Assembly (NCBI RefSeq): GCF_000737315.1
Contig: NZ_JMCB01000010.1
Location: 62,001-126,000, forward strand
DNA: 64,000 bases
Reading direction: 5' to 3'
Origin: Hyalangium minutum
Lineage (GTDB): Bacteria; Myxococcota; Myxococcia; Myxococcales; Myxococcaceae
Below, piece by piece: positions 26,615 through 59,587 of the stretch (positions are counted from its first letter, which is position 1; each line of letters starts with the position of its first letter). The notes under the pieces are model-generated. The model was not told the origin of the DNA, ran no database searches, and worked only from the letters and a program-made list of their open reading frames with translations. The position numbers and the translations under genes were made by a program.

Positions 26615-26938
26615 TCAGAATGGAACATCGTCTTCTGGAGGAGGCTTGTTCGCCGTGGCCTTGGGGGCAGCCGCGGGCGCGGGCCGGTTCCCCACCGACA
26701 ACGGGGCCACGGTGTCCCGGCCCTCCTCGTCCACCAGGAGCTGCTCGATGCGCTGCTCGGCCTCGTTGAGGAGCTTCTCGCCCTTGCGGACCAGACGGAT
26801 GCCCTCCTCGAACGCCTTGAGCGACTCCTCGAGCGACAGCGAGCCGCCCTCCAGCTTCGCCACCATCTCCTCCAGGCGCGCTACCACGTCCCCGTACTGC
26901 TCGGGCGCTGGCTCCCCTGCCTTGGCTGCCTTCGACAC
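26615..26938 (-). CDS. xseB: Exodeoxyribonuclease VII small subunit (copy 1)
   Basis: GTG 26938 with GGAGGT RBS; LEEMVAKLEGGSLSLEESLKAFEEGIRLVRKGEKLLNEAEQRIEQL; extended tail ending EDDVPF. Confidence 0.95.
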   Translation of the reverse strand: MSKAAKAGEPAPEQYGDVVARLEEMVAKLEGGSLSLEESLKAFEEGIRLVRKGEKLLNEAEQRIEQLLVDEEGRDTVAPLSVGNRPAPAAAPKATANKPPPEDDVPF

Positions 26939-27021
26939 GTCCAACACCTCCACCCCGTGAAGAGGGGGCGGGCGACTCTAAAGGACGCCCTTTCCGGGAG
27001 CCAGCGCGGACTGCCAGTGCG

Positions 27022-28773
27022 TCAGCAGTCGACCGGACCCTTGATGGCGGTCACCGTGGCCTCGATCTCCTCACAGCCCTCTAACGTCTTTGCCCCGGCA
27101 CTGGCGAGCCTGATGCCGAGCAACTCGCCCGGCTGCACATCTCCCACGGTGCGCACCACCGCCCCATCGCGCTTGCGGAAGGTTACAGCGTACCCACGGC
27201 CCATGACCTTCAGCGGACTCATCGCATCCAGGCGGACAGCCAGGCGCTGGAACCGCTGCTGGGCCTCCGAGAGGGCCTGCCGCTGCAGGGCCTCCAGCCG
27301 GGACTTCTTCTCGGCCAGCTGGGCCCGCTCGGCCGCCACCCGGGCCGCCGGAGAGGCCCGCTGCAACCCGAGCTCCCCTCTGGCCAGCTCCGCCCGCCGG
27401 GTGGTGATGCTCGCGCGGGCCGCTTCCTGGAGCCGCGCCGCCAGCTTCAGCAGGTTCGCGCGCTGCTCCCCGAGCCGGGCCTGGGGCCGTGCCCGCTGGA
27501 GCCGCTCCTGCAGCCCTCGCAGCTTCTCGCGGCGCTCGCGCTGGGCGGGCCGGAGGGACCGCATCATCAGCTCGAGCTGTTCGGAGAGGAACAGCCGCTC
27601 CTGCCCCATGCGCCGCCGGGGATCCACCAGCCGCCCGGCCAGGCTGCCCAGCCGCTCGCGCAGCTCCGACTGCCGCCGCATCACCGCCTGGCGCAGCCGC
27701 GAGCCATGGGTGGCCAGCGTCAGCTCCAGGTCGCTCAGCACCGGCGAGAGCCGCTCCGCCGCCGCGCTGGGCGTGGCCGCGCGCCAGTCCGCCACGAAGT
27801 CCGCGATGGTGAAGTCGATCTCGTGGCCAATGGCCGACACCACCGGCACGGGCGAGGCGTGAATCGCCCGCGCGACGAGCTCCTCGTTGAAGGTCCAGAG
27901 GTCCTCCACCGAGCCACCGCCGCGCGTCACGACGATGACGTCCACGTCCGTGTGGCTCAGGCGCTCGAGGGCGTTGGCCACCTCCAGCGCCGCGCCATCG
28001 CCCTGCACGCGCGCGTCGGCCAGCAGCACGCTCAGCCGGGGGTTGCGCGAGTGCAGCACGCGCAGGAAGTCCTGGAGCGCCGCGCCGGTGCGGCTCGTCA
28101 CCACGCCGATGCGCCGGGGCAGGAACGGCAGCGGGCGCAGCGGGCGGATGCGCCGGTCTCCAATCAGCCCCTCGGCGGCCAGCCGCTCCTTGAGCTGCTC
28201 GAAGGCGAGCGCGCGAGCGCCCTCCCCCACCGGCTCCAGCTTGCTGATGATGAGGCTGTAGCGACCCTGGGGCGCGTAGACGTCCACGCTGCCCTCGGCC
28301 ACCACCTCCAGGCCATCCCGCAGGGCAAAGCGCAGCCGCCCCGCCTGCGAGGCCCACACCTTCGCGTCGATGCAGGCGTCCGCATCCTTCAGGGTAAAGT
28401 ACAGGTGGCCTCGGGCGTTGGCGCCCCGGAAGCCGGACACCTCACCTCGGACGAGCACGCGCGGGTAGCGCGCCTCGATGGTCTCTTTGAGCTGCCGCGT
28501 GAGCTCGCCCACGGACATCACCGTGCGCGAGGGCCGGATCGGAGCGCCAGGCAGTGACGCCAGCGGCACCGACACCTCCTGCACGGGGGCGGGCCGCTCC
28601 ATAGCCACGGGCCGCTCCACCTGAGAAACCCCCAGGGGAGCCTTCTCCGGGGCCGGGGGCGGCTTGGGCGGAGCCACGGCAGCCGGAGGCTTGGGCGCCT
28701 CGGCGGCGCCAAAGAGATCCCCCTGCACAGTGGCAGCGGGGATCTCCTCACCCGCCTTGCGGCGCTTCTTCAT
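27022..28773 (-). CDS. xseA: Exodeoxyribonuclease VII large subunit (copy 1)
   Basis: VRGEVSGF...GHLYFTLKD OB fold; VVTSRTGAALQD, RGGGSVEDL, SAIGHEID, ATPSAAAE; long coiled coil; about 85-aa N-terminal extension. Confidence 0.96.
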   Translation of the reverse strand: MKKRRKAGEEIPAATVQGDLFGAAEAPKPPAAVAPPKPPPAPEKAPLGVSQVERPVAMERPAPVQEVSVPLASLPGAPIRPSRTVMSVGELTRQLKETIEARYPRVLVRGEVSGFRGANARGHLYFTLKDADACIDAKVWASQAGRLRFALRDGLEVVAEGSVDVYAPQGRYSLIISKLEPVGEGARALAFEQLKERLAAEGLIGDRRIRPLRPLPFLPRRIGVVTSRTGAALQDFLRVLHSRNPRLSVLLADARVQGDGAALEVANALERLSHTDVDVIVVTRGGGSVEDLWTFNEELVARAIHASPVPVVSAIGHEIDFTIADFVADWRAATPSAAAERLSPVLSDLELTLATHGSRLRQAVMRRQSELRERLGSLAGRLVDPRRRMGQERLFLSEQLELMMRSLRPAQRERREKLRGLQERLQRARPQARLGEQRANLLKLAARLQEAARASITTRRAELARGELGLQRASPAARVAAERAQLAEKKSRLEALQRQALSEAQQRFQRLAVRLDAMSPLKVMGRGYAVTFRKRDGAVVRTVGDVQPGELLGIRLASAGAKTLEGCEEIEATVTAIKGPVDC

Positions 28774-46802: not shown

Positions 46803-47774
46803 TCACTTCTGGGAGAGCTCGTCCAGGAACTCCTCCTCCTGGATGACGCGCTTCTTGATGAGCAGCCGGACGAGCGCCGCCACCATCTGGGCGGGCATGA
46901 TCTTCTGCATGGGCGCCAGCGGCTCTTCGCCGTGCGACAGGCGCTCGAGGTTGTCGAGCACCTGCAAATCCTCCTCCGAGAAGTTCGGCGGGAGGTTCGG
47001 ATCGGGCGGCTTCACGTTCTTGGCCGCGCCGCCGAACATGATCACCGGCACCTTGGGCTTGTCCGGATCGGGCGGAGGCGGAGGCGGAGGCTGCGCCGCC
47101 GGGCGCTTCTTCGTCCCGAGCAGATCATCGATGAAGTCCGTGGCCGCTTCCTTGGGAGGAGGCGGCGGGGTGGCGGGCGCAGGCGTCAGGATGGGAGGCC
47201 GGGGCCGAGGCGTGGGCGGAGTGACTTCATCCTCCTCGTTGACGACGTGCCCCTGAAGGATCTGCGCGCCGCGCTCGATCTTCATGCCGCCGACGTCGTC
47301 CTCCTCTCCCAGCGGGACCGCCTGGACGATGTCGAGCTTCTCCCCTCGCGCCGCCATGATCGCCTGGTCGATGTCGTCCGAGGCGGCCACGTACACCTTC
47401 AGCGCCTTGTGGAGCTGGAAGCGCAGCTCATCGATGAGGGAGAGGTCCGCCGGATCCTCCACGGCCACGTGGAGCCGCTCGGTCTTGCCGTCGGTCTCGA
47501 GCTTGAAAGGGACGATGCGGTGCTCGGCCTGGAAGTCCACCGAGACGAGCGTGGCGATCCCGAGGGGGACCTCCGGCAGCTCCACGAAGGGCATGTCGAA
47601 CTGCTGGGCCAGCACGCGCGCGAGCTGCTTGGGGGAGATCATCCCCATGGACACCATCACCGAGCCCAGCCGCGTCCCCTTGCCATACGAGCGCTTCTGG
47701 CCGAGCGCCGTGCGGAGCTGCGCCTCCGTGACGTAACCGGCCTGGACCAGCATCTCGCCAATCTTCTTGCGCAT
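46803..47774 (-). CDS. MshEN/GspE N-terminal domain protein without an ATPase domain (A)
   Basis: [21 protein letters not shown] and [24 protein letters not shown] tandem motifs; VAVEDP; no Walker A. Confidence 0.85.
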
Positions 47775-47783
47775 GACGGGATG

Positions 47784-48551
47784 TTACCGCTTGACCTTGG
47801 CGAGGTACTCCTCGCGAGTGAAGACGCCCTTCTCGATGAGAAGCTCCACCATGGCCTTGAGGGCGGCGACCTCTTTGCGCTGCACCTCCTCGACCGTCTT
47901 CAGCAGCTCGGCGGGACTACCACCCCCGCCCACCGAGGGCATGCCCCCCGTCGAAGGCCGAGCCGGAGCCGCCGCGGGCCGTGCCGGAGGAGGAGGAGGA
48001 GGAGCCGCAGCCGGAGCCGCCCCGGGTTGCGGCGCGTTGCGCATGTCCTTGACGACAGTCCGGCCCTGGGCGTCCAGCACCTTGAAGTTGGTGTCCGCCT
48101 CGCCCAGCTCCGCGTTCTCCTCATAGAGGCGCTGGTAGGCGCGGGCGATGGAGGTGCGGCCCGCCACGTTGGGAACGATGCGGCACTTGGTGATGGCGCG
48201 CAGTTCGTCCAGGTGGCGCACGTTGAGGGGGTCCGCCACGGCGACCACCAGCGTCTTGCCGTCGTCGCGCAGCTGCAGCGGCAGCACCGCGAAGTCGCGG
48301 GCCGTCTGCGAGGGAATCTTGGAGCGCACGTGCGGTGGAATTACCTGCACGGCGTCCAGGTTGACGGCGGGGATGTTGAGCTGCTTGGACAGCGCCCGGA
48401 CGAGGATGTCCTCGGACACCATGCTCATGCGGACCAGGATCTCTCCCAGCTTGCCGCCCCACTTTGCCTGCTCCGCCAGAGCCGCCTTGAGCTGGCTCTC
48501 CTGGAGCACGTTCGCCTTGATCAGCAGTTCACCGAGCTTGATCTGTGCCAT
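47784..48551 (-). CDS. MshEN/GspE N-terminal domain protein without an ATPase domain (B)
   Basis: KLGELLIKANVLQESQLKAALAEQ and KLGEILVRMSMVSEDILVRALSKQ; VAVADP; no Walker A. Confidence 0.85.
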   Translation of the reverse strand: MAQIKLGELLIKANVLQESQLKAALAEQAKWGGKLGEILVRMSMVSEDILVRALSKQLNIPAVNLDAVQVIPPHVRSKIPSQTARDFAVLPLQLRDDGKTLVVAVADPLNVRHLDELRAITKCRIVPNVAGRTSIARAYQRLYEENAELGEADTNFKVLDAQGRTVVKDMRNAPQPGAAPAAAPPPPPPARPAAAPARPSTGGMPSVGGGGSPAELLKTVEEVQRKEVAALKAMVELLIEKGVFTREEYLAKVKR

Positions 48552-50707: not shown

Positions 50708-52531
50708 TCACTGCAGGGTCACGTTCGCAGCGGCCTGGGTGGCCGGGGCGGAGTTGACCGGCATCTCCGCGTCCTTGAAGCCCTCCTTGCGGACGCGGAC
50801 CTTGTACTCGCCCTTGTCCACGCTCTTGAAGCGATACTGGCCGGTCTCGTTGCTCCGGGTGGACTGGACGATGCGGCCCTTCTCGTCCACCAGCTCGACC
50901 ACGGCGTTGGAGGCCTGCTGGCCATTGCCCAGCGCGAGCCCGCCCGCCACCTCGCCATACTGGGCGTACTGGCTCTCCGGTGTGTCGTGCGTGAACAGCA
51001 GGCGCTCCTGCTGCAACACCGCGCCCTTCTCGTCCACGAAGGAGAACTCGGCGAAGTAACGGCCCGTGCGGAACGGCTTGCCGTCCTGGCCCTTGCCGCC
51101 GAAGGTGAACGTCATCGGTCCCTGGGCGCTCGGCCGCGTCTCCTGGAACATCTGGGTGCCAGGCTGCGGCTGGCCGTCCTTCATGTCTGCGATGCGCACG
51201 CGCAGTTCCACCCGGCCGGAACGCTCCTTCGGGGCGATGTTGCGCGCGGCCAGCTCCGTCCCACTGCTGGTGAAGCGCGAGCCCAGCGAGGTGAGGAACA
51301 CGTTGCCCGCGTACACCTCCAGCCGCCGCCGGCTCACCTGCCCCTGGGTGTTGGTGGCCACCACGTCCACGGTGTGCTTGCCGTCGCTCAGGCCCTTCGT
51401 GTCCCAGGTGTAGCTGAGCTTGCCGCCCTGCGCCTTCTGCGCGGAGCGATCATCGATGAGCAGTTCCACCTTCTGGATGCCCTTGCCCGTGTTGTCGCGG
51501 GCATCCACCTGGATCGTCTGAGAGGGAGCGACGTGCTCGCCGTCCCGGAGGCCACTCACGGCCACGCTCACCACATCCACGGAGACGAGCCCGAGCACTG
51601 CCCACAGCGCCTCGGCCTTGCCGCTGCCCGCCGCGCCCCAGCCTCCGTCCTTCTGCTGATGGGACACCAACCAGCGGATGCCGCGAGACACGGGGGTGTC
51701 CTCCTCGGTGAAGCCCGCCTGCCGGAGCGCATACACGGTCTGCCCCGTGGCGAACGGATCCGAGGTGCCAGCCGAGAAGCCCCAGCCCCCATCCTTCTGC
51801 TGGAGCGAGACGAGGTAGCGCGCCACCTTCCCCGCGACATCCTCCGAGCGGCTCGCGCCCGCGGCGGTGAGCCCCAGCAGAGCGTAGTTCACGTCTTGCA
51901 GATAAATGCCCTCGGGCTTGCCCTCCCACGAGGCCGCCTTCTGGGCGATGAACTCCTCCGCCCTGCGGATGGGCGCCAGCCACGCATCATCCGCCGTGCG
52001 CGCATAGGCCTGCCGCCAGGTCTGCATGGCCTGATAGGTGGCCTGCATGAGGCCTGCGGTCACCGGGCGCGACTCGTGATCACCCTGCACCGAGCCATCC
52101 TTCTGCTGGTACTCCAAGAGGGTCCGCGCCAGCTTGAGCAGGTCGTCGCGCAGCTTGGAGTCCACGTACTGGTCATAGCGGGCAAAGGCCACGCCACCGA
52201 AGGTGCGCGCAGTGCGCGGGAAGAGGCTCTGGCTCAGGCCGCCTGCGGTGCGCGCTCCGCCCTGCGAGTGAAGGACGCCCTCCAGGATGATGCCCAGCTC
52301 CTTCTGGGGGACGTTGTATTGGTTCTGCTTGCCCACCGCGAGGCCCTCCAGGGTCACCGCCTGGACGTGGCAGCCGTAGCACTGGTGTTGCTGCTGCCAT
52401 GCGGCGGTCGAGCGCGCCAGGAAGGTGATGCCACGCTGGGCGGCCTCGCGAACCTTGGGGTCGCCCTGGGCTGCCAAGGCAGGTAGGGCGAAGAGAAGAG
52501 ACACGACCAGGGTAAGCCGGGACGACGGCAT
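50708..52531 (-). CDS. Secreted prenyltransferase/squalene-cyclase-like alpha/alpha barrel with a CxxCH motif, Ig-like domains and a carboxypeptidase-regulatory-like C-terminus
   Basis: Signal peptide; CYGCH; QQKDGS and two QQKDGGW (QW-type) repeats; YTWDTKGLSDGKHTV Ig domain; TRSNETGQYRF...GEYKVRV Cna-B-like domain. Confidence 0.8.
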   Translation of the reverse strand: MPSSRLTLVVSLLFALPALAAQGDPKVREAAQRGITFLARSTAAWQQQHQCYGCHVQAVTLEGLAVGKQNQYNVPQKELGIILEGVLHSQGGARTAGGLSQSLFPRTARTFGGVAFARYDQYVDSKLRDDLLKLARTLLEYQQKDGSVQGDHESRPVTAGLMQATYQAMQTWRQAYARTADDAWLAPIRRAEEFIAQKAASWEGKPEGIYLQDVNYALLGLTAAGASRSEDVAGKVARYLVSLQQKDGGWGFSAGTSDPFATGQTVYALRQAGFTEEDTPVSRGIRWLVSHQQKDGGWGAAGSGKAEALWAVLGLVSVDVVSVAVSGLRDGEHVAPSQTIQVDARDNTGKGIQKVELLIDDRSAQKAQGGKLSYTWDTKGLSDGKHTVDVVATNTQGQVSRRRLEVYAGNVFLTSLGSRFTSSGTELAARNIAPKERSGRVELRVRIADMKDGQPQPGTQMFQETRPSAQGPMTFTFGGKGQDGKPFRTGRYFAEFSFVDEKGAVLQQERLLFTHDTPESQYAQYGEVAGGLALGNGQQASNAVVELVDEKGRIVQSTRSNETGQYRFKSVDKGEYKVRVRKEGFKDAEMPVNSAPATQAAANVTLQ

Positions 52532-52583
52532 GGAGACCTCGCGGGGGTTGGCGCCCCTGGAACGCGCGAGGTTCCCAAAGGTT

Positions 52584-53360
52584 TTATTCTCGCATCACGA
52601 GACTGCAGCAGGTGACCGCGCCTTCGGCCTTCTGCAGCTCCGACACATCCACGGGGGTGACGGAGATCCCCGCGTCCTCGAGCCGCCGCTGCGTGCGCGG
52701 GAAACAAGCCGGATATACCACCCCTCCCCCGAGCCACAGTGCATTGGCGGCGTGCTCCTCGCCCGGATCGGCTTCGATCAGGCGGAAGCTCGCGAACGCA
52801 GCGGAATCCACCCACGCCGGCTGCACCAGCAGCGTGTCATCCGCGACCTGGGTGACCGCGGACTTCAGGTGCAGACAGCCACGGATGGGCACGGATTGCA
52901 CCGAGTACCCGAACTCGGCGGTATGAGCGCGCAGCTGGGCGATCCCCACCGGGTTGCTGCGCGCCGACTGGCCGACATACAGCGAGCGGCCCACGCGCAG
53001 CACATCGCCACCATCCAGCGTGCCCGGCGCTTCGAGTGTGCGCAGCGGGCGATGGCGCGCCAGCACCTCCGCCACCGAAGAGACCTCCGCGCGGCGTGAC
53101 TCCGCACCCGGCCGCGTCAGGATCGCGACCTCATCCAACACCACCGCCACGTCCTCGACGAAGACGGCATCGGGCAAGGCGTCCTCAGCCGGGAGCGCCA
53201 GCACTTGGCACCCGAGCGACTCGAGCGCCTTCCGGTAGGCCTCATGCTGCGTGGCGGCCACGGAGACATCGATCGCACTGCGCTGCACGAATGACAGCTC
53301 GCAGCCTCCGAGACTGGAACTCACATCACGGGTGATCGCAATGAGCTTGGGACCTGGCAT
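52584..53360 (-). CDS. ddaH: N(G),N(G)-dimethylarginine dimethylaminohydrolase
   Basis: AVFVED (Asp), LDGGDVL, CLHLKS (His), GAVTCCS (Cys) amidinotransferase-fold triad. Confidence 0.88.
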   Translation of the reverse strand: MPGPKLIAITRDVSSSLGGCELSFVQRSAIDVSVAATQHEAYRKALESLGCQVLALPAEDALPDAVFVEDVAVVLDEVAILTRPGAESRRAEVSSVAEVLARHRPLRTLEAPGTLDGGDVLRVGRSLYVGQSARSNPVGIAQLRAHTAEFGYSVQSVPIRGCLHLKSAVTQVADDTLLVQPAWVDSAAFASFRLIEADPGEEHAANALWLGGGVVYPACFPRTQRRLEDAGISVTPVDVSELQKAEGAVTCCSLVMRE

Positions 53361-53366
53361 GGTGCC

Positions 53367-54194
53367 TCACGCCGGCTTCCGGCCCGAGCTGATGGGCACG
53401 TGCCACACCGCGTACTGGGGCGGAGTCTCGATCGCCGAGACCATGGTGTTGAAGTCGGCGGTGACCTCGGACTGGGAGCGACCACTGGCCTCGGCCAGAG
53501 GCTTCACATAGCCATCCCTCCAGGCCTTGAGGATGCCAGCGAAGGTGGCTCGCGGCACGCGCAGCGTGTCCACGGTCACGTAATCCATCGCGATGTCGAG
53601 GTATCCGAATCGATCCAGCAAAGGAGGCGAATGGCGGCCGATGCGGACATCGCAGCCGATGCGGCCTCCGAAAGGAACCAAGTGCGTGTTCCAGAACCGG
53701 TCCGGATCGAAGGATCCCCCGGGCGGAGCAGGCATGTGCAACATGCCGTAGTCCTCGGACAGCAGGTGCAGCCATCCACCAGGCTTGAGCACGCGGGTGA
53801 TCTCGGCCAGCACCTGAGGGAAGTCGGGCACCGCCTGAGACACGTGCCGACACACCACGAGCTCGAAGCTGGAATCCGGGTGCTTCAGCGCGAAGGCATC
53901 GCCCTGCTCGTAGCGAATGCGCCCACCGAACACGTCCCCCTGACGAGCGATCGCGAGGTTCGACTCCAAGATGTCGATGCCAATCAGGCGCGCCTGCGGA
54001 TAGCGGGAGGCCAGCCGCCGGGTGATCTCGCCGGTGCCACAGCCGAGATCGAGGATGCTCAGCGGGCCCGACAGGCCATAGCGATCGAAGAGGCGCTGTT
54101 CCTGCGGCCAGATGGCCCCGGCTTGATGAGCGAGGGTGCGCGTCATCGACTCGTCGCCCATCTGCTCGGCCTGCGGATTGCGATCATTCTCCAT
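53367..54194 (-). CDS. Class I SAM-dependent methyltransferase
   Basis: ILDLGCGTGE motif I, QGDAFAL, EITRVLKPGG. Confidence 0.92.
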   Translation of the reverse strand: MENDRNPQAEQMGDESMTRTLAHQAGAIWPQEQRLFDRYGLSGPLSILDLGCGTGEITRRLASRYPQARLIGIDILESNLAIARQGDVFGGRIRYEQGDAFALKHPDSSFELVVCRHVSQAVPDFPQVLAEITRVLKPGGWLHLLSEDYGMLHMPAPPGGSFDPDRFWNTHLVPFGGRIGCDVRIGRHSPPLLDRFGYLDIAMDYVTVDTLRVPRATFAGILKAWRDGYVKPLAEASGRSQSEVTADFNTMVSAIETPPQYAVWHVPISSGRKPA

Positions 54195-54238
54195 GCAGAA
54201 TGTCCTTCTATGGCCTGTTCCGGTGCTCTTGAGCGCAC

Positions 54239-54538
54239 CTACTTGGCGTCATCTTCGTCGGTTCCGGGGTCAGGGGCTTCACGCTCGAGTTGCTCGGCGA
54301 TGGTCCTCACCTGCATCTCCGCCGCTTGGATCTTCCCGCGGCAAAGTGTCACGAGCTCGGCGGCTTCCTTCACCAGCCCGGAGAGCGCGTCGACGTCGAC
54401 CTCGCCTTCCTCGATCTCCCGCAGGATCGCCTCCAGACGTGACGCAGCCTCACCATAGGAAGGCTCGCTCGTCGACCGCTTCTGCTTCGCCATGTCCCCG
54501 CCAGGAGCCTTCTTCATCGAGTGCTTGGACTTTGCCAT
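54239..54538 (-). CDS. xseB: Exodeoxyribonuclease VII small subunit (copy 2)
   Basis: SYGEAASRLEAILREIEEGEVDVDALSGLVKEAAELVTLCRGKIQAAEMQV. Confidence 0.9.
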   Translation of the reverse strand: MAKSKHSMKKAPGGDMAKQKRSTSEPSYGEAASRLEAILREIEEGEVDVDALSGLVKEAAELVTLCRGKIQAAEMQVRTIAEQLEREAPDPGTDEDDAK

Positions 54539-54542
54539 ACGC

Positions 54543-56141
54543 CTATTTCTTTTCCGGTCCTTCCGAGCGAAGCCTCAACGCGCCCAGCTTCAACTCGGCC
54601 GAGAGCGTGGTTCCGCTGGGAGCATGTGCTGGATCCTTGAGGACCGCCCCCGTCTCCGTGCGCAAGATGGCATACCCGCGCTCCACCACGCGCCGTGGAT
54701 CCAGGAGGAGCAGGAGCCGCCCGCGCGCTTCGACGCGCTCGCTTTCGCGCACGAGGTGCCTGGAGGCGCTCCGGCCCAGCCGAGAAGCGATCTCGTCGAC
54801 TCGACGCGACGCGGAGGAGAGGTCGCGCCCCGCGCCCAGGTGGAGCCGCCGAGCCGCATCCTGAAGAGTCCGAGTGCTCTGCTCGAGCAAGTCATTGGCC
54901 ACGAGTGGGATCTGGCGGGCCTGCTCCTCGAGTTCCGACGAGGTGCCCTCGAGGATTTCCCTGGCGTGCTCGAGAATCCTTTCCAGGCGCGATTCGATCA
55001 CCTCCCGGGCCTCCAGGACGCGCTCGACGAGCAGGCCGGCCGCCGCTGTTGGGGTCTTGGCTCTCCAGCCCACGAAGTCGAGCAGAGACATGTCCCGCTC
55101 ATGGCCGATTCCCACCACGACCGGAATGGGGAATGTCGCGATCGCCCGGGCGATGGCCTCCGAGTCGAACCAGGCGAGATCCGTCCGCGAGCCGCCCCCC
55201 CGGCAGATGAGCAGAACATCGAACTCCCCGGCATGGGCTCGGAACCAGTCCAGCGCATTCAGGACCGAGGGCTCCGTCTGTCGTCCCTGGACACGCGCGC
55301 CATGAACCATGACATCAAAGGCGAGCCCAGACTCTTCCAGCGTACGCAGCACGTCATGGTAGGCATCCGAGTTCAGGCTCGTCACGAGGCCCACACGCAT
55401 GGGCAGCAGTGGAAAGGGCAACGCGCGGTTCCGCTCGAGGAGTCCCTCCTCGGCAAGTCGTCGGCGAAGCTCCTCTTGTCGCCGGGCGGCCTCTCCCAGC
55501 GTGTAGTTCAGGTCGAGATCCTCGATCACGAACTGGTACGAGCCCCATGGGACGTAGAGATCGACGCGCCCACACACCCTGATCTGGATTTCGTCCTCGA
55601 GTTGAAAGGGCGCTCCCGCCTGGGCGAGCCGGTCCTCCAGCTCTCGCAGCGTGCGCCCGAAAAGGACCGCCTTGAGCCTGGAGGACTCCTTTCCCCACGC
55701 ATCTCGCTCGACGAGCTCGAAGCCGACGACGCTCCTGTGCCGGGCCTTGTTGAACCCGGAGATCTCCCCCACGAGCCACAGGGAGTTCGGAAATGCCCTT
55801 TGGATCGCCCCTTGGACCTTCTCATTGAGCTGAGAGACGGTGAGGTCGGTCGCCGCTCCCAGCTGCCTCGGTGAAGCACCAGGCTCGCGCCCATTCGTGT
55901 CGAGGGCGAGCTCACCGCCGCGTTCACGATACAGGCGCCGCGTGTTCTCGCAGAAGTCGAAACCCTCTGCGTGCAGTTGGTCCACCACCGCCACCACGTT
56001 CTTCTCGGGAACCGACCAGTATTTTTCGGTGCCGTTCCAGTGGCGGGAAGGGAGCGCTTTGACGACGTCCACGAGCCTGCGATCGAAAGGGAAGCGGATC
56101 TGGAGCGTCCCGAGACTGTCGTTGGTGACCCGCCGACTCAT
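54543..56141 (-). CDS. xseA: Exodeoxyribonuclease VII large subunit (copy 2) with an N-terminal HARP-like domain
   Basis: WLVGEISGF OB fold, VTSLNSDAYHD, RGGGSRTDL, GIGHERD, KTPTAAA, VERGYAI; extra residues 12-63 resemble HARP. Confidence 0.9.
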   Translation of the reverse strand: MSRRVTNDSLGTLQIRFPFDRRLVDVVKALPSRHWNGTEKYWSVPEKNVVAVVDQLHAEGFDFCENTRRLYRERGGELALDTNGREPGASPRQLGAATDLTVSQLNEKVQGAIQRAFPNSLWLVGEISGFNKARHRSVVGFELVERDAWGKESSRLKAVLFGRTLRELEDRLAQAGAPFQLEDEIQIRVCGRVDLYVPWGSYQFVIEDLDLNYTLGEAARRQEELRRRLAEEGLLERNRALPFPLLPMRVGLVTSLNSDAYHDVLRTLEESGLAFDVMVHGARVQGRQTEPSVLNALDWFRAHAGEFDVLLICRGGGSRTDLAWFDSEAIARAIATFPIPVVVGIGHERDMSLLDFVGWRAKTPTAAAGLLVERVLEAREVIESRLERILEHAREILEGTSSELEEQARQIPLVANDLLEQSTRTLQDAARRLHLGAGRDLSSASRRVDEIASRLGRSASRHLVRESERVEARGRLLLLLDPRRVVERGYAILRTETGAVLKDPAHAPSGTTLSAELKLGALRLRSEGPEKK

Positions 56142-56147
56142 CAGGTC

Positions 56148-56156
56148 ACCTTACCA
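56148..56156 (-). promoter_or_regulatory. Extended -10 (TGGTAAGGT) 6 nt upstream of the xseA2 ATG
   Basis: TGn-TANNNT geometry typical of leaderless starts; AAGGTG could instead act as an RBS. Confidence 0.4.
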
Positions 56157-56214
56157 CCGTCCAAACGCTTCAGTCCCCGCATTGCCGGGCTCGGCTCCCC
56201 GCCGTCTCCCTTGC

Positions 56215-58608
56215 TCAGTAGGCGAGCCCCTCGTACTTATAGGAGAGCTGAGCGAAGCCCATGATGCCACCCGGCGGCGAGCCCAGCTGATCCACGCCGT
56301 GGTCATTGAGGACGTTGAGCACGTTGGCGCTCACCGCAAGGCCATTGGAGAAGGTGTAACCGGCCGAGACGTCCGCCACGAAGCGCGCCGGCACCTTACC
56401 CTCCTGCACCAGCAGGGCGCTGTCCCACCGGCCCGACCGGAACTCGAAGGCGTCCTGGTACCGGCCGAAGACGCGCACGAACGAGTTCTGCACCCACAGG
56501 TTCTGCACCGTGACGGTGGCCTTGAACTTCAGATCCGGCACGTTCAGCAGCAGCGCCGGCTGGCCCGAGCTTCCAGTGCTGAACTTGATCAGCTTCATGT
56601 ACGAGGCGCTGCCGCTGAGCGTGACGTTCGGGTTGAGCTGGTACTCGAGCCCGACGTCCGTCCCCGCCACGCGTGAACGGCCGAAGTTCGCATAGGTGGA
56701 GAGCGTCCCCTCCACCGGAGTCCCCGCCGCCACCGGCGTGCCGTCCGGGAAGAAGGCGAAGGTGCCGTTGGCGGGGTTGGCTCGCGACGTCAACGCGCTG
56801 ATGAAGTTCCGGTACCACGAGTGGTACGCCACCACGTCCACCAGGAGCCGATCCGCGAACGTCGCCTTGTAGCCGACCTCCACCGAGTCCACGCTCTCGG
56901 GCACCAGCGGCGCGATCTCCGAGACGACATTCCCCTCTGCATCCTTGATGATGAAGCCCGTGCGGTTGCCCACCAGTGTGTTGCTGATGAGCAGGTAGTT
57001 CTCGAGGATGGTGGGGCTCTTGAACGCGCGGTTGTAGCCCAGGCGCACGTGCTGGTTGCGCTCCGGGCTGTAGACCACGGCGGCCTTCGGACTGAACTGC
57101 GCCGAGTAGTTGGAGTGCGTATCCACCCGCGCCGCGGCCACCAGCCGCAACCGGTCGCGCAGCAGCGAGTAGTCCCCCTGCAGGTAGCCGCCGAACTCGG
57201 TGGCGTTCAGCGTCTTGCCATCGACGTCGGCCAGGTACGTGCCCTTGGAGCTGGGGTTGTAGTACCGGAGCTGCACGCCGGTGATGAGCTTCAGCCCGCC
57301 GAACGCGTTCTGGTACTGCACCTCCGAGTCGATGAGCTGACTCTGGTCGACGAACTTGATCTGCTCCTTGATCTCATCCAACGAGGACACGTCCTCCGGC
57401 GCCCCGCCGTTGTTCTGCACGACGCTCGCCAGCCGGTCCATCTGGTACGTGCCGCCCGCGTTGCTGTAGGTGCGAGACACCTGCACGAACCAGTTCGGGT
57501 GGCTGGCCGAGATCGTCTGCTGGTGCACCTGCCACCCGCGCAGCTGGTTCCGTCCCGAGTTGGTGAGCGACATCCCATCCGTCAGCGAGAAGCCGTAGCC
57601 CGCCTTGAAGTTCCAGTCGCCCCGCCGGAGGTACGCGTAGGCCTCCGCCTTGGCGGAGAGCACGTCGTAGTTCTCGATCATATCGCCCTCGAACACGAGC
57701 GGCTTTGAGGCGGCCCCGTAGTAGTGCGTCGGCAGGTTCCGGTCCGGCGAGAAGTCCCGGCCGCGGACGAACTGACCGTTGATCTTGTAGCCGAAGTCCT
57801 GCTTAGCGGTGCCCGCCACGCGCCCGGACACGTCCACGAGCTGCTGCGAGCCGCCGCGCAGCACCACCGAGGCGCCCGACTCATCCCAGGGCGTCTTCGT
57901 CAGCACGTTGATTACCCCCGCGTGGGCGTTGGCACCATAGAGCGCAGACGCCGGGCCAATCACCGCCTCCACCGACTTGACGTCGATGTTCGGGGTCGGC
58001 AGCTGGGCGTTCAGCGGCAGGCCGTTGCCGGGCAGCTGCGCCAGCCGGCCATCCACCATGGTGATCATCCGCGAGTTGAACTGCGTGTTGAAACCGCGCG
58101 TGGAGACACGCTTCTCGTTCAAGCCCGTGTCCGCGTAGTCGATGCCCTTCACGGACGAGAGCGCCGCCATGTACGAGGTACCGCCGGTCATCTGCAGCGT
58201 CTTCGAGGAGACAGACTCCACGGTGACGGGGGACTCGAGCCGCTTCTCCCCGAACTTGGAGCCCGTCACGACGATCTCTTCACCGAACTGCTCGTCCAGC
58301 TGCAGGTCCGCCTCCAGCGAGGTCGTCTTTCCCGCGATCACCTCCACCTGCTGGGTGAAGTCCTTGTAGCCAGGGAAGGAGATCTTCAGCTCATGCTTCG
58401 CGGCCGGAACGTTGTTCAGCTCGAACTTCCCATCGGCGTTCGTGGTGGCCGACAACACCGTACCCACCACCGCCACCTGGGCTTCTGGCAGCGGCTCATT
58501 CCCACCGACGTAGACCGTGCCTCGAATCGTGCCGCCCTCCTGCGCCCAGGCAGCCGCGGCCACCAGCCACAGTGAAACAGCAAGTCCCCAACGCATTGCG
58601 TTACGCAT
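56215..58608 (-). CDS. TonB-dependent receptor with an N-terminal carboxypeptidase-regulatory-like domain
   Basis: Probable start ATG 58608 with RBS; EEIVVTGS, RITMVDG-like plug region, GPASALYGANA, C-terminal beta strand ending YKYEGLAY. Confidence 0.92.
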   Translation of the reverse strand: MRNAMRWGLAVSLWLVAAAAWAQEGGTIRGTVYVGGNEPLPEAQVAVVGTVLSATTNADGKFELNNVPAAKHELKISFPGYKDFTQQVEVIAGKTTSLEADLQLDEQFGEEIVVTGSKFGEKRLESPVTVESVSSKTLQMTGGTSYMAALSSVKGIDYADTGLNEKRVSTRGFNTQFNSRMITMVDGRLAQLPGNGLPLNAQLPTPNIDVKSVEAVIGPASALYGANAHAGVINVLTKTPWDESGASVVLRGGSQQLVDVSGRVAGTAKQDFGYKINGQFVRGRDFSPDRNLPTHYYGAASKPLVFEGDMIENYDVLSAKAEAYAYLRRGDWNFKAGYGFSLTDGMSLTNSGRNQLRGWQVHQQTISASHPNWFVQVSRTYSNAGGTYQMDRLASVVQNNGGAPEDVSSLDEIKEQIKFVDQSQLIDSEVQYQNAFGGLKLITGVQLRYYNPSSKGTYLADVDGKTLNATEFGGYLQGDYSLLRDRLRLVAAARVDTHSNYSAQFSPKAAVVYSPERNQHVRLGYNRAFKSPTILENYLLISNTLVGNRTGFIIKDAEGNVVSEIAPLVPESVDSVEVGYKATFADRLLVDVVAYHSWYRNFISALTSRANPANGTFAFFPDGTPVAAGTPVEGTLSTYANFGRSRVAGTDVGLEYQLNPNVTLSGSASYMKLIKFSTGSSGQPALLLNVPDLKFKATVTVQNLWVQNSFVRVFGRYQDAFEFRSGRWDSALLVQEGKVPARFVADVSAGYTFSNGLAVSANVLNVLNDHGVDQLGSPPGGIMGFAQLSYKYEGLAY

Positions 58609-58747
58609 GTAGACCCCCTCCGACACGTTCATCCGACCTGAAGGATGATTCATGTTTCAGCGCGGCGAGTAGCATTCACTTTCTGTTACTGTCAATGCGC
58701 GCTGGGTCAAAACGTGGCCCGGTACGTCCCCTCCCGGAGCCCAACCC

Positions 58748-59587
58748 ATGGCGTCTTTCGCCCACGTGAATGGCCTGCGGCTGCACTACCTCGATCATGC
58801 CGGGGGCGAGCCGCTCCTGGTGCTCATGCACGGGCTGTCGGCCAACGCCCACTGCTTCGATGGGCTCGTCCGAGCGGGCCTGAGCCCCCGCTACCGGGTG
58901 ATCTCGGTGGACCTGCGGGGGCGAGGCCTCAGCGACAAGCCCGCGAGCGGCTATTCCATGGCCGACCACGCCGCGGACATCCTCGGGCTGCTGGACACGC
59001 TGGGCACCGGGCCGGTGGTGCTCGGGGGGCACTCCTTCGGCGGGCTGCTCACGTTCTACATCGCCGCGCACTGGCCGGAGCGAGTCTCCCGCATGCTCAT
59101 CTTCGATGCGGGCTCCATGCACCCGCGGGTGCGCGAGCTGCTCAAGCCTTCGCTGGCCCGGCTGGGAAAGCTCCTCCCCTCGGTGGACGCGTACCTCAAC
59201 GCGGCGCGGCTCGCTCCGTACCTCAACGGCCTGTGGGACGAATCCGCGGAGGCGTATTTCCGCGCGGATGTGCAGGCGAATCCGGATGGCACCGCGCAGT
59301 CCCGCTCCTCGCCCGAGGCCATTACCGAGGCCATGGAGCGCGTCCTCTCCGAGCCCTGGTCCGAATATCTGCCCCGCGCCCGTGCCCCCGCCCTCCTCCT
59401 CAACGCCGTCGAGGGCTTTGGCCCCCCGGGCACGCCCCCCATCGTCCCGCCCGAGCTGGCACAGGAGACAGCCCGCGCCCTGCCCCATTGCCGCTACCTC
59501 GTGGTGCCTGGCAACCACACCACCATGCTCTTCGGAGGCAACGCCAGCCACACGGTGAAGGCCATCACGGACTTCCTGTCCACCTGA
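58748..59587 (+). CDS. Alpha/beta hydrolase
   Basis: MHGLSA, VDLRGRGLS, GGHSFGG nucleophile, PGNH His. Confidence 0.92.
   Translation: MASFAHVNGLRLHYLDHAGGEPLLVLMHGLSANAHCFDGLVRAGLSPRYRVISVDLRGRGLSDKPASGYSMADHAADILGLLDTLGTGPVVLGGHSFGGLLTFYIAAHWPERVSRMLIFDAGSMHPRVRELLKPSLARLGKLLPSVDAYLNAARLAPYLNGLWDESAEAYFRADVQANPDGTAQSRSSPEAITEAMERVLSEPWSEYLPRARAPALLLNAVEGFGPPGTPPIVPPELAQETARALPHCRYLVVPGNHTTMLFGGNASHTVKAITDFLST

What the first reader, a model, noticed from the sequence alone, without database searches (positions are those of the whole stretch)
54239..56141. Second, divergent exonuclease VII with an N-terminal HARP-like domain
Seen: a complete second xseA-xseB pair with catalytic motifs kept, a different OB-fold style (WLVGEIS...FELVE), a shorter coiled coil and no clamp or SSB-like motifs. 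Residues 12-63 (LQIRFPFDRRLVDVVKALPSRHWNGTEKYWSVP) match the F.Y/F...L...K..PS..W/Y....K.W pattern I associate with HARP domains. Established: HARP domains of SMARCAL1 and the related T4 UvsW region recognise ss/ds DNA junctions, and ExoVII trims some retron msDNAs and removes trapped topoisomerase adducts. Inference: a structure-targeted nuclease for forks, msDNA, or phage/prey DNA. I know of no description of this fusion.
Basis: partly seen in the sequence, partly recalled or inferred. Interest (0 to 1): 0.8.

Follow-up and report, generated by a model that had tools for sequence, protein, structure and literature searches.

The report
Exonuclease VII with HARP DNA-junction domain
This myxobacterial genome carries, besides its ordinary exonuclease VII, a second two-gene exonuclease VII. 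Its large subunit starts with a HARP domain, the DNA-fork-recognising module of the human repair protein SMARCAL1. The fusion is real and widespread, we found no paper describing it, and it probably steers the nuclease to single-strand/double-strand DNA junctions.

Summary
The window encodes two xseA-xseB pairs: pair 1 at 26615-28773 and pair 2 at 54239-56141, both on the minus strand. XseA2 (532 aa) is a full exonuclease VII large subunit. It has the OB fold and the catalytic residues D263/R314/H347/D350, which match E. coli D155/R205/H238/D241. It also has a 116-residue XseB-binding helix and a C-terminal beta domain.

Residues 1-75 form an extra, well-folded domain joined by a disordered linker. 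Sequence profiles and structure models both identify it as a HARP domain:
- 52 of 56 family members hit Pfam HARP.
- The family profile hits the SMARCAL1 HARP crystal structure.
- The same profile hits bacterial HARP-SNF2 helicases at E 1e-27 to 1e-13.
- The model resembles the XPB damage-recognition domain, SMARCAL1 HARP and phage HARP proteins.

The fusion is not unique to this genome. At least 120 protein clusters share it, from Hyalangium, Sorangium and Acidobacteriota, and all are named plain "ExoVII large subunit". Every related locus examined has a small gene directly downstream: five encode a close XseB2 homologue, and one (Sorangium) was not tested. Pair 1 is the vertically inherited myxobacterial copy. 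Pair 2 is a patchy accessory cassette with no conserved neighbours and no link to defence or retron genes.

Most likely function (inferred): a junction-targeted ExoVII. It is a new variant of a known enzyme, of moderate interest.

The parts
54543..56141 (-). xseA2: HARP-domain exonuclease VII large subunit (532 aa, stop codon included)
   Evidence: ORF. TIGR00237 scores 299 bits against a cut-off of 180. PF02601 and PF13742 both hit. It aligns to E. coli XseA 8txr_A at E 2.9e-33.
56147..56152 (-). Shine-Dalgarno-like AAGGTG, 5 nt upstream of the xseA2 ATG
   Evidence: Read directly from the sequence. It supports translation from residue 1.
55917..56141 (-). HARP domain, residues 1-75 (beta-beta-alpha-beta-beta-alpha-beta-alpha)
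   Evidence: Pfam HARP hits residues 14-45 at E 0.0025, or 1.4e-4 for the isolated domain. 52 of 56 homologues hit HARP. The family profile hits SMARCAL1 HARP 4o66 at E 4.6e-4. AF2 pLDDT is 91.7. Foldseek finds XPB DRD and SMARCAL1 HARP in PDB, and phage HARP proteins at TM up to 0.85. The profile finds HARP-SNF2 helicases at E 1e-27 to 1e-13.
55842..55916 (-). Disordered linker, residues 76-100
   Evidence: pLDDT is below 50 for residues 83-96 in the full-length model. Length varies from 8 to 53 residues and mean identity is 27% across the family.
55515..55841 (-). OB fold, residues 101-209, with a family-specific inserted helix at 162-174
   Evidence: PF13742 covers 100-209. Secondary structure from AF2. 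The gap relative to E. coli and XseA1 is seen.
55056..55514 (-). Connecting helix and catalytic domain, residues 210-362, with D263, R314, H347, D350 and D355
   Evidence: Alignment to 8txr_A. These residues are invariant in A2. Positions. Their roles in E. coli are from PMC3439923.
54705..55052 (-). Single long helix, residues 364-479 (116 aa): the predicted XseB-binding stalk, shortest length class of the family
   Evidence: AF2 model. Family helix lengths are exactly 116, 138 or 160 residues. Quantised XseB sites are described in PMC10835039.
54546..54695 (-). C-terminal beta domain, residues 483-532
   Evidence: AF2 strands at 492-525. It aligns with the E. coli C-terminal domain.
54239..54538 (-). 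xseB2: cognate small subunit (99 aa), starting 4 nt after the xseA2 stop
   Evidence: TIGR01280 scores 45 bits (cut-off 35) and PF02609 hits at E 1.4e-11. It is 61-75% identical to the XseB next to HARP-XseA in other phyla but only 23% identical to XseB1.
27022..28773 (-). xseA1: the canonical, vertically inherited large subunit (583 aa, no HARP domain), listed for comparison
   Evidence: It is 38% identical to XseA2 over the OB and catalytic domains. Orthologues are found in Myxococcus, Corallococcus, Archangium, Cystobacter and Melittangium.
26615..26953 (-). xseB1: small subunit of the canonical pair (112 aa)

Best explanation
xseA2-xseB2 encodes a second, complete exonuclease VII from a distinct and widespread lineage, here called HARP-ExoVII. 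Its large subunit carries an N-terminal HARP domain on a flexible linker 8-53 residues long, ahead of the usual OB fold, nuclease domain, XseB-binding helix and C-terminal domain.

Proposed mechanism. The enzyme probably assembles like E. coli ExoVII, with about five XseB2 per XseA2, giving an XseA4-XseB20 particle. It would cut single-stranded DNA with the conserved D/R/H/D active site. The four tethered HARP domains, which in SMARCAL1 confer binding to forks and ss/ds junctions, would capture the duplex/single-strand junction of overhangs, flaps, gaps or stalled forks. That would deliver the adjacent single strand to the sequestered nuclease head, or open the head.

In this Hyalangium-like genome the pair is an accessory, horizontally mobile two-gene cassette. 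It sits beside the housekeeping pair and has a dedicated small subunit.

Shown here: the domain identities, intact catalytic residues, family conservation, cognate XseB and patchy distribution. Inferred: junction binding, stoichiometry and biological role.
For: ExoVII identity: pass the curated cut-offs. Catalytic residues align with the E. coli residues shown to be essential and are invariant in the family.

HARP identity:
- The Pfam HARP hit is weak for the window protein, but 52 of 56 family members hit it, with a best E of 2.8e-7.
- The family profile's best PDB hit is the SMARCAL1 HARP structure 4o66, E 4.6e-4, sharing the LPSR[RH][WY]...K.W motif.
- A search of 1.84 billion representatives gives 2506 hits. 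The top 150 include about 68 SNF2-class hits. The SNF2-class proteins scanned with Pfam carry SNF2 and Helicase_C domains, most with HARP repeats that pass Pfam's own cut-off, for example P0154 at 55.5 bits.
- The AF2 model has pLDDT 91.7, with a beta-sheet packed on helices. This matches the published description of the HARP fold (PMC4666394).
- Foldseek's top PDB hits are the archaeal XPB damage-recognition domain (prob 0.98) and SMARCAL1 HARP (prob 0.94, 24% identity). Phage HARP and helicase proteins match at E down to 5e-6 and TM 0.85.

Real, selected domain:
- Mean pairwise identity is 56% in HARP, 60% in OB and 27% in the linker.
- The start is conserved and a Shine-Dalgarno sequence is present.

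Dedicated pair:
- XseB2 is 61-75% identical to the XseB next to HARP-XseA in four MAG loci (two labelled Acidobacteriota, two of unknown taxonomy), against 23% to XseB1.
- Every related locus examined has a small gene directly downstream of HARP-xseA; five are confirmed XseB2 homologues and the Sorangium one has no Pfam hit and was not compared.

Accessory status:
- XseA1 has orthologues across Cystobacterineae.
- Named relatives of XseA2 are limited to two Hyalangium species, Sorangium and Acidobacteriia.
- The flanking genes differ even in H. versicolor.

Architecture: the helix comes in lengths of 116, 138 or 160 residues, in 22-residue steps. This fits the quantised XseB-binding units reported for ExoVII (PMC10835039).
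Against: - No DNA-binding or nuclease data exist for any member of this family.
- The window protein alone is below Pfam's HARP gathering score.
- Foldseek E-values against PDB are weak (0.05-0.2), and TM to 4o66 is only about 0.45-0.53.
- T4 UvsW did not appear among the top structural hits.
- HARP in SMARCAL1 works together with an ATP-driven motor. Its behaviour on a motor-less nuclease is unknown.
- E. coli ExoVII needs its OB folds to form a catenated head, and how a 100-residue N-terminal extension fits there was not modelled.
- I could not determine whether HARP-ExoVII is the only ExoVII in Acidobacteriota. If it is, that would argue for a general housekeeping role rather than a specialised one.
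Confidence: 0.6

Rival explanations
1. Redundant housekeeping enzyme. HARP-ExoVII is simply the ordinary ExoVII of another lineage, such as Acidobacteriota, picked up by horizontal transfer. The HARP domain would only add generic DNA affinity and give no distinct substrate class or role.
For: Flanking genes in the related loci are ordinary metabolic and housekeeping genes. The protein passes the xseA equivalog model. The family is large and conserved across phyla. The cassette has a patchy distribution in Myxococcota.
Against: The HARP domain is conserved about as strongly as the OB fold and is retained in all of the roughly 120 closest clusters. That argues for a selected, specific function. 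In SMARCAL1 and UvsW, HARP confers structure specificity rather than generic affinity (PMC4666394; Mason et al. 2014, from memory).
Confidence: 0.22
2. Regulatory or protein-binding module. The HARP domain would not bind DNA here. It would gate the autoinhibited ExoVII head or recruit a partner protein such as SSB, a replisome component or a repair factor.
For: E. coli ExoVII is sterically autoinhibited and is opened by substrate (PMC10835039). The long flexible tether would suit either role.
Against: The domain shares the conserved basic/aromatic motif (R33, W35, K.W) with SMARCAL1 HARP. All other architectures found for this domain are DNA enzymes, namely SNF2 translocases and tyrosine recombinases. 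No conserved neighbouring gene suggests a partner.
Confidence: 0.1
3. Defence or retron-linked nuclease. The pair would process retron msDNA or attack phage or prey DNA as part of an immune or predatory system.
For: ExoVII matures msDNA in some retrons (PMC12640716). Myxobacteria are rich in retrons (from memory). The cassette is accessory and mobile. HARP folds are common in phage proteins.
Against: Neither subunit hits PADLOC. The window has no Rfam match apart from one tRNA, so no retron RNA family was detected; no search for a retron reverse transcriptase gene was run. No defence genes are conserved next to the pair in five loci from different lineages. No HARP-XseA was found in IMG/VR. 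The neighbouring methyltransferase matches the MADS 'mad2' model only over its generic SAM-binding core.
Confidence: 0.05
4. Chance resemblance. The N-terminal domain is an unrelated small alpha/beta domain and the HARP label is spurious.
For: The single-sequence Pfam score is below the gathering cut-off. PDB Foldseek E-values are above 0.05.
Against: Several independent lines agree. The family profile matches the SMARCAL1 HARP crystal sequence at E 4.6e-4. 52 of 56 members hit PF07443. The profile finds HARP-SNF2 proteins at E down to 1e-27 in 1.84 billion sequences, in regions that Pfam itself calls HARP. Phage HARP proteins match structurally at TM 0.6-0.85.
Confidence: 0.03

Closest known systems
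Escherichia coli exonuclease VII (XseA4-XseB24; PDB 8TXR; Liu et al. 2024, PMC10835039; Poleszak et al. 2012, PMC3439923)
   Same: It shares the OB fold, the dehydroquinate-dehydratase-like nuclease domain with the same four essential residues and the RGGG...GHxxDxxxxD motif. It also shares the single long XseB-binding helix whose length changes in 22-residue units, the C-terminal beta domain, and an adjacent small subunit gene.
   Different: XseA2 has an extra 75-residue HARP domain and a disordered linker at the N-terminus. Its OB fold has a roughly 21-residue helical insertion. Its helix is one unit shorter, predicting 5 XseB instead of 6. It is only about 30-38% identical to canonical XseA. 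Its XseB has diverged strongly from the canonical XseB of the same genome (23% identity).
SMARCAL1 (HARP) annealing helicase and prokaryotic or phage HARP-SNF2 proteins (Pfam PF07443; PDB 4O66)
   Same: The N-terminal domain is homologous to their HARP repeats in sequence motif and predicted fold. As in those proteins, it sits N-terminal to a DNA-processing catalytic module.
   Different: XseA2 has one HARP copy instead of two or three. It has no SNF2 ATPase motor, and the effector is an ATP-independent ssDNA nuclease. It therefore shares the domain but is not a member of the SMARCAL1 family.
Archaeal XPB damage-recognition domain, the MutS mismatch-recognition domain and the T4 UvsW N-terminal domain (the 'substrate recognition domain' superfamily of Mason et al. 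2014, recalled from memory)
   Same: The XPB damage-recognition domain is the best structural match in PDB (prob 0.98, TM about 0.5). MutSbeta appears lower in the list (rank 23, prob 0.23).
   Different: There is no detectable sequence similarity to these domains. UvsW was not among the top 50 structural hits.
XseA1/XseB1 of the same window (canonical myxobacterial ExoVII)
   Same: The same enzyme family, gene order and strand.
   Different: XseA1 has no HARP domain. It has a Pro/Ala-rich, low-complexity N-terminal extension of about 85 residues instead, and a much longer helix (TPxAAA-to-RGY distance of 192 residues against 125). It is inherited vertically across Cystobacterineae.

Membership tests
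Exonuclease VII large subunit (XseA; TIGR00237 / PF02601 + PF13742) | Scores above the curated family cut-offs | tested here: met
   TIGR00237 scores 299.4 bits against a cut-off of 180. PF02601 scores 225 bits against 35.9. PF13742 scores 59.6 bits against 27.
Exonuclease VII large subunit (XseA; TIGR00237 / PF02601 + PF13742) | Catalytic residues equivalent to E. coli D155, R205, H238 and D241, and the motif RGGG(x)nGHxxDxxxxD | tested here: met
   D263, R314, H347, D350 and D355 are present and invariant in 56 homologues. Their roles in E. coli are from PMC3439923.
Exonuclease VII large subunit (XseA; TIGR00237 / PF02601 + PF13742) | Long helical XseB-binding region followed by a C-terminal beta domain | tested here: met
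   The AF2 model has helix 364-479 and strands at 492-525. Helix lengths in the family are quantised at 116, 138 and 160 residues.
Exonuclease VII large subunit (XseA; TIGR00237 / PF02601 + PF13742) | Partner small subunit XseB | tested here: met
   xseB2 lies 4 nt downstream. TIGR01280 scores 45 bits against a cut-off of 35. It is conserved next to HARP-xseA in other loci.
Exonuclease VII large subunit (XseA; TIGR00237 / PF02601 + PF13742) | ssDNA-specific bidirectional exonuclease activity | not testable with these tools
   This needs purified XseA2/XseB2.
HARP domain (Pfam PF07443) | Score at or above Pfam's gathering cut-off (25 bits) for this protein | tested here: not met
   17.8 bits for the full-length protein and 21.7 bits for the isolated domain. 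Some close homologues do pass: P0008, P0031 and P0051 carry a precomputed PF07443 hit.
HARP domain (Pfam PF07443) | Family-level sequence homology to bona fide HARP domains | tested here: met
   52 of 56 members hit PF07443, best E 2.8e-7. The profile hits SMARCAL1 HARP 4o66 at E 4.6e-4. The profile hits HARP-SNF2 proteins at E 1e-27 to 1e-13, overlapping Pfam's own HARP calls.
HARP domain (Pfam PF07443) | [quoted passage not shown] | tested here: met
   The AF2 model has pLDDT 91.7 with strands 4-7, 12-16, 34-36, 41-45 and 62-63 and helices 21-28, 46-57 and 65-73. Foldseek gives 4o66 prob 0.94, XPB DRD prob 0.98, and phage HARP proteins TM 0.62-0.85. The fold description is from PMC4666394.
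HARP domain (Pfam PF07443) | Binds forked or ss/ds-junction DNA | not testable with these tools
   This needs EMSA or fluorescence anisotropy with residues 1-75.
SMARCAL1-type annealing helicase | SNF2 ATPase motor C-terminal to the HARP repeats | tested here: not met
   XseA2 has no SNF2 or Helicase_C domain. It shares only the HARP module.
Anti-phage defence or retron-associated system | Match to a known defence protein model, or a conserved defence or retron neighbourhood | tested here: not met
   Neither subunit hits PADLOC. Rfam finds only a tRNA in the window. The neighbourhoods vary and look housekeeping-like.

The most novel reading that the evidence does not exclude
HARP-ExoVII may be a bacterial structure-gated nuclease. 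Binding of its tethered HARP domains to a stalled or reversed fork, a gap, or a protein-blocked end would open the autoinhibited ExoVII head, so that nascent or damaged single strands are resected only at such junctions. This would be a motor-less bacterial counterpart of the eukaryotic link between fork remodelling by SMARCAL1 and nucleolytic processing. HARP would also emerge as a general, portable junction reader reused by translocases, recombinases and nucleases in prokaryotes.
Probability: 0.2. Interest if true: 0.7.

Novelty: new variant of a known kind. Interest (0 to 1): 0.55.

Why it matters
ExoVII is found in most bacteria. It matters for repair of quinolone-trapped gyrase, for mutation avoidance and for retron msDNA maturation. 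How it finds its substrates is still unclear, because in the E. coli structure the active sites are sequestered.

A natural, widespread variant with a recognisable junction-recognition module gives a direct handle on substrate targeting and on how the complex is activated. It also shows that the HARP domain, mostly discussed for human SMARCAL1 and Schimke immuno-osseous dysplasia, is a mobile module in bacteria. It is joined there to at least three kinds of DNA enzyme: SNF2 motors, tyrosine recombinases and ExoVII.

Genomes like this one, with two ExoVII complexes and very different small subunits, are natural test beds for subunit specificity and division of labour.

Tried and rejected
- The genome-contig scan with the N-domain alignment failed because no stretch was conserved enough. 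The taxonomic census is therefore thin. Whether HARP-XseA is the only XseA in Acidobacteriota or Sorangium stays unresolved.
- The listing of cluster members on 10 NCBI-derived homologues returned no organism names.
- The paper on the SMARCAL1 HARP structure (Mason et al. 2014, PNAS) is not in the library. Its content is cited from memory only. A secondary description was taken from PMC4666394.
- The promoter and terminator scan of 53300-56400 found nothing. The tool covers only sigma-70-type consensus, so this is uninformative for a myxobacterium.
- The Rfam gathering scan of the window found only one tRNA.
- PADLOC gave nothing for XseA2 or XseB2.
- The IMG/VR scan found one canonical XseA without HARP and no HARP-XseA.
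- Retron or defence linkage was considered and rejected for lack of any supporting context.
- A second HARP domain elsewhere in the window was searched for with the family HMM over all six frames. None was found.
- No XseA phylogeny was built, because the sequences in hand cover only two clades.
Full report
**What is in the sequence**

The window is about 68% G+C. Its proteins are closest to Hyalangium, with 82-93% identity to Hyalangium or metagenomic sequences.

The reported interval holds two minus-strand ORFs separated by 4 nt: a 532-aa ORF at 54543..56141 and a 99-aa ORF at 54239..54538. A second, different pair lies at 27022..28773 (583 aa) and 26615..26953 (112 aa). So "a complete second xseA-xseB pair" is correct.

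XseA2 passes NCBI's xseA equivalog model (299 bits, cut-off 180). It also passes Pfam Exonuc_VII_L and the OB-fold model tRNA_anti_2. XseB2 passes the xseB models.

**Catalytic competence and architecture**

XseA2 residues 100-521 align to residues 10-437 of E. coli XseA, PDB 8TXR. In that alignment, D263, R314, H347 and D350 stand at the positions of E. coli D155, R205, H238 and D241. Substituting any of those four residues in E. coli abolishes nuclease activity but not DNA binding (PMC3439923). The extended motif RGGG...GHxxDxxxxD is intact. All of these residues are invariant in 56 non-redundant family members.

An AlphaFold2 model built on that alignment has mean pLDDT 84.6. It shows, in order:
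- a compact N-terminal domain (residues 1-75);
- a disordered linker (pLDDT below 50 at 83-96);
- the OB fold (101-209), with an inserted helix at 162-174 that E. coli XseA and XseA1 lack;
- a connecting helix;
- the alpha/beta nuclease domain (249-362);
- one uninterrupted helix (364-479);
- a small C-terminal beta domain.

The helix is 116 residues long. Across 120 homologues it takes exactly three lengths: 116 residues (56 proteins), 138 (23) and 160 (41). These 22-residue steps match the "quantized" gain and loss of XseB-binding units reported for ExoVII (PMC10835039).

The distance from the conserved TPxAAA to RGY is 125 residues in XseA2, 149 in E. coli (six XseB per XseA) and 192 in XseA1. 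I infer about five XseB per XseA2 and about eight per XseA1.

**The N-terminal domain is translated and conserved**

An AAGGTG Shine-Dalgarno sequence sits 5 nt upstream of the ATG at 56141. The start "MSRxV" and the following 75 residues are conserved in essentially all of the 120 best database hits, which cover 99-100% of the query.

Mean pairwise identity in the family is 56% for this domain, 60% for the OB fold, 77% for the nuclease domain and 27% for the linker. Linker length varies from 8 to 53 residues. This is the signature of a folded, selected domain on a flexible tether.

**It is a HARP domain**

For the window protein alone, Pfam HARP (PF07443) matches residues 14-45 at E 0.0025 and 17.8 bits. 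As an isolated domain it scores 21.7 bits. Both are below the 25-bit gathering score, so the single-sequence test is not met. Family-level evidence is consistent and comes from independent sources:

1. 52 of 56 non-redundant N-domains hit PF07443, with a best E of 2.8e-7. No other family comes close.
2. An HMM of the 56 domains, searched against all PDB sequences, finds the crystal structure of the SMARCAL1 HARP domain (4O66) as its best hit at E 4.6e-4. The two share the motif LPSR[RH][WY]....K.W.
3. The same profile was searched against 1.84 billion representative proteins. It finds 2506 proteins at E<=1e-3 and 259 at E<=1e-10.
   - Among the top 150, 27 are XseA-type and about 68 are SNF2-class hits. 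The SNF2-class proteins scanned with Pfam have two or three HARP repeats followed by SNF2 and Helicase_C domains, which is the SMARCAL1 architecture.
   - In these, Pfam itself calls HARP above its cut-off, for example P0154 at 55.5 bits and P0144 at 45.3 bits.
4. The AF2 model of the domain is confident (pLDDT 91.7) and has the topology beta-beta-alpha-beta-beta-alpha-(beta)-alpha. This agrees with the published description of HARP as a small beta-sheet packed against two helices (PMC4666394).
5. Foldseek against PDB ranks the archaeal XPB N-terminal damage-recognition domain first (prob 0.98, TM about 0.5), then SMARCAL1 HARP (prob 0.94, 24% identity). Mfd and MutSbeta appear further down. 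The E-values are weak (0.05-0.2), as expected for a 75-residue query.
6. Foldseek against predicted viral structures gives stronger matches, with E down to 5e-6, TM up to 0.85 and rmsd 1.1 A. These include proteins named "HepA-related protein", "SWI/SNF-related...regulator" and phage helicases.

From memory, Mason et al. 2014 reported that HARP, the XPB damage-recognition domain, the MutS mismatch-recognition domain and the UvsW N-domain form one structural class of substrate-recognition domains. I could not retrieve that paper. UvsW itself was not among my top 50 structural hits.

**A family with its own small subunit**

The fusion is not a one-off. Every one of the 120 best 90%-identity clusters has it. 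The few that carry source names are all labelled "exodeoxyribonuclease VII large subunit". Named sources are Hyalangium versicolor (88% identity), H. gracile, a Myxococcaceae MAG, many Sorangium strains (66%) and an Acidobacteriia MAG (about 51%). The limited genome scan added three Acidobacteriota MAGs and one "Deltaproteobacteria" MAG.

Every related locus examined has a small gene directly downstream. XseB2 is 61-75% identical to the small subunits of four of those loci (two Acidobacteriota MAGs, two MAGs of unknown taxonomy). It is only 23% identical to XseB1 of its own genome. XseA1 and XseA2 share 38% identity over the OB and catalytic domains. HARP-XseA and its XseB thus travel as a co-evolving two-gene unit.

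**Accessory rather than core in Myxococcota**

XseA1 has orthologues at 65-82% identity in Hyalangium, Corallococcus, Myxococcus, Pyxidicoccus, Archangium, Cystobacter, Melittangium and Aggregicoccus. None of these well-sequenced genera except Hyalangium appears among the relatives of XseA2. There, identity drops from 88% (Hyalangium) straight to 66% (Sorangium).

The flanking genes differ between loci:
- In the window, the flanks are a TonB-dependent receptor upstream, and downstream a SAM methyltransferase and an amidinotransferase-fold gene.
- In H. versicolor, they are VWA-domain and hypothetical genes.
- The flanks differ again in Sorangium and in the two long MAG contigs L001 and L002.

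I conclude that pair 1 is the vertically inherited enzyme. Pair 2 is a patchily distributed cassette, probably transferred horizontally.

**No defence or retron signal**

Neither subunit matches any PADLOC model. Rfam finds only a tRNA in the window. Neighbouring genes are ordinary. The IMG/VR scan recovered only one canonical XseA without HARP.

The neighbouring methyltransferase matches the MADS "mad2" model at E 3e-19, but only across its generic SAM-binding core. I do not read this as a defence link.

It is true that ExoVII trims msDNA in some retrons (PMC12640716) and resolves trapped gyrase (PMC7929499). Nothing ties this particular pair to either process.

**How it most likely works**

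This part is inferred. In E. coli, four XseA catalytic domains are sequestered in the head of an XseA4-XseB24 particle, and DNA binding appears to open it (PMC10835039). DNA binding needs the OB fold (PMC3439923).

In HARP-ExoVII, each OB fold carries a HARP domain on a tether of 8-53 residues. In SMARCAL1, HARP confers recognition of forks and ss/ds junctions. The natural substrate of ExoVII is a single strand attached to a duplex.

The simplest model is that the tethered HARP domains dock on the junction. That would raise affinity for overhangs, flaps, gaps or forks and present the single strand to the nuclease head. They might also trigger opening of the head.

Confidence levels:
- about 0.9 that this is a genuine HARP-XseA fusion enzyme;
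- about 0.6 for the explanation as a whole, as entered in the Best explanation section;
- somewhat lower for the junction-targeting step taken on its own.

Rivals, in order of weight: a generic affinity tag on a redundant, horizontally acquired housekeeping enzyme; a regulatory or protein-binding role; a defence or retron role; a chance resemblance.

**Novelty**

Four full-text searches combining HARP, XseA or exonuclease VII found no paper describing the fusion. The structural and biochemical ExoVII papers describe XseA as a four-domain protein with no such extension.

The proteins are, however, already in public databases under the ordinary name, and a few carry an automatic PF07443 hit. I classify the finding as a new variant of a known kind. 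It is a solid, testable lead for DNA-repair biochemistry, but not a new type of system.

**Limits**

- There is no experimental evidence for any member of the family.
- The taxonomic census is thin.
- I could not determine whether HARP-ExoVII is the sole ExoVII in the Acidobacteriota that carry it.
- How the N-terminal extension fits the catenated ExoVII head was not modelled.

Noticed in passing
P0207, P0246, P0261, P0263 (database proteins found with the A1 profile; not in the window): Proteins of about 570-600 aa with three HARP-like repeats, followed by a SAM-like N domain and a tyrosine recombinase (Phage_integrase) catalytic domain. This is a second HARP fusion without a helicase motor.
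   Followed up: partly
P0144, P0148, P0149, P0154, P0162, P0167, P0183, P0192 (database proteins): Prokaryote-type proteins with a SMARCAL1-like architecture: 2-3 HARP repeats plus SNF2 and Helicase_C. Two are interrupted by an intein or LAGLIDADG element (P0167, P0183). They are the closest non-XseA relatives of the XseA2 N-domain.
   Followed up: partly
window 54705-55052 (-) and homologues P0001-P0120: The XseB-binding helix of the HARP-XseA family takes exactly 116, 138 or 160 residues (56, 23 and 41 proteins). These are 22-residue quanta. The window protein is in the shortest class.
   Followed up: yes
window 27022-28773 (-): The canonical XseA1 has a Pro/Ala-rich, low-complexity N-terminal extension of about 85 residues. 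Its helical region is unusually long: the TPxAAA-to-RGY distance is 192 residues against 149 in E. coli, suggesting about eight XseB sites.
   Followed up: partly
window 53367-54194 (-): A class I SAM methyltransferase lies immediately downstream of xseB2. It matches the PADLOC MADS 'mad2' model at E 3.4e-19, but only over the generic methyltransferase core (profile positions 281-400 of 492). It is not conserved next to HARP-xseAB elsewhere.
   Followed up: partly
L009 (Hyalangium versicolor JAHXBF010000044.1) compared with window 52000-59000: The xseA2-xseB2 cassette of H. versicolor encodes an 88% identical protein but sits among entirely different genes. This suggests the two-gene unit relocates or is transferred as a cassette.
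   Followed up: partly
L001 6936-7583 (-) and L002 7304-7894 (-): A PEBP-family gene (PF01161) lies divergently just upstream of HARP-xseA in two unrelated long MAG contigs. It is absent from the window.
   Followed up: no
window 46803-47774 (-) and 47784-48551 (-): Two adjacent genes each encode an MshEN domain (a c-di-GMP-binding module) with no other recognised domain.
   Followed up: no
window 56215-58653 (-) and 61057-63768 (-): Two TonB-dependent receptors have N-terminal CarboxypepD_reg domains. One lies directly upstream of xseA2.
   Followed up: no
L010 6001-7245 (IMGVR_UViG_3300029116_000228): A predicted viral contig encodes a canonical XseA without HARP, 30% identical to XseA2 over residues 98-513.
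   Followed up: no
L008 12935-17641 (Sorangium sp. CP150355.1): About 3 kb downstream of the Sorangium HARP-xseAB pair lie an AAA_16 ATPase gene and a PDDEXK_1 + DUF87/HerA-like gene. They could be a defence or repair module, but are separated from xseAB by unrelated genes and are not seen in other loci.
   Followed up: no
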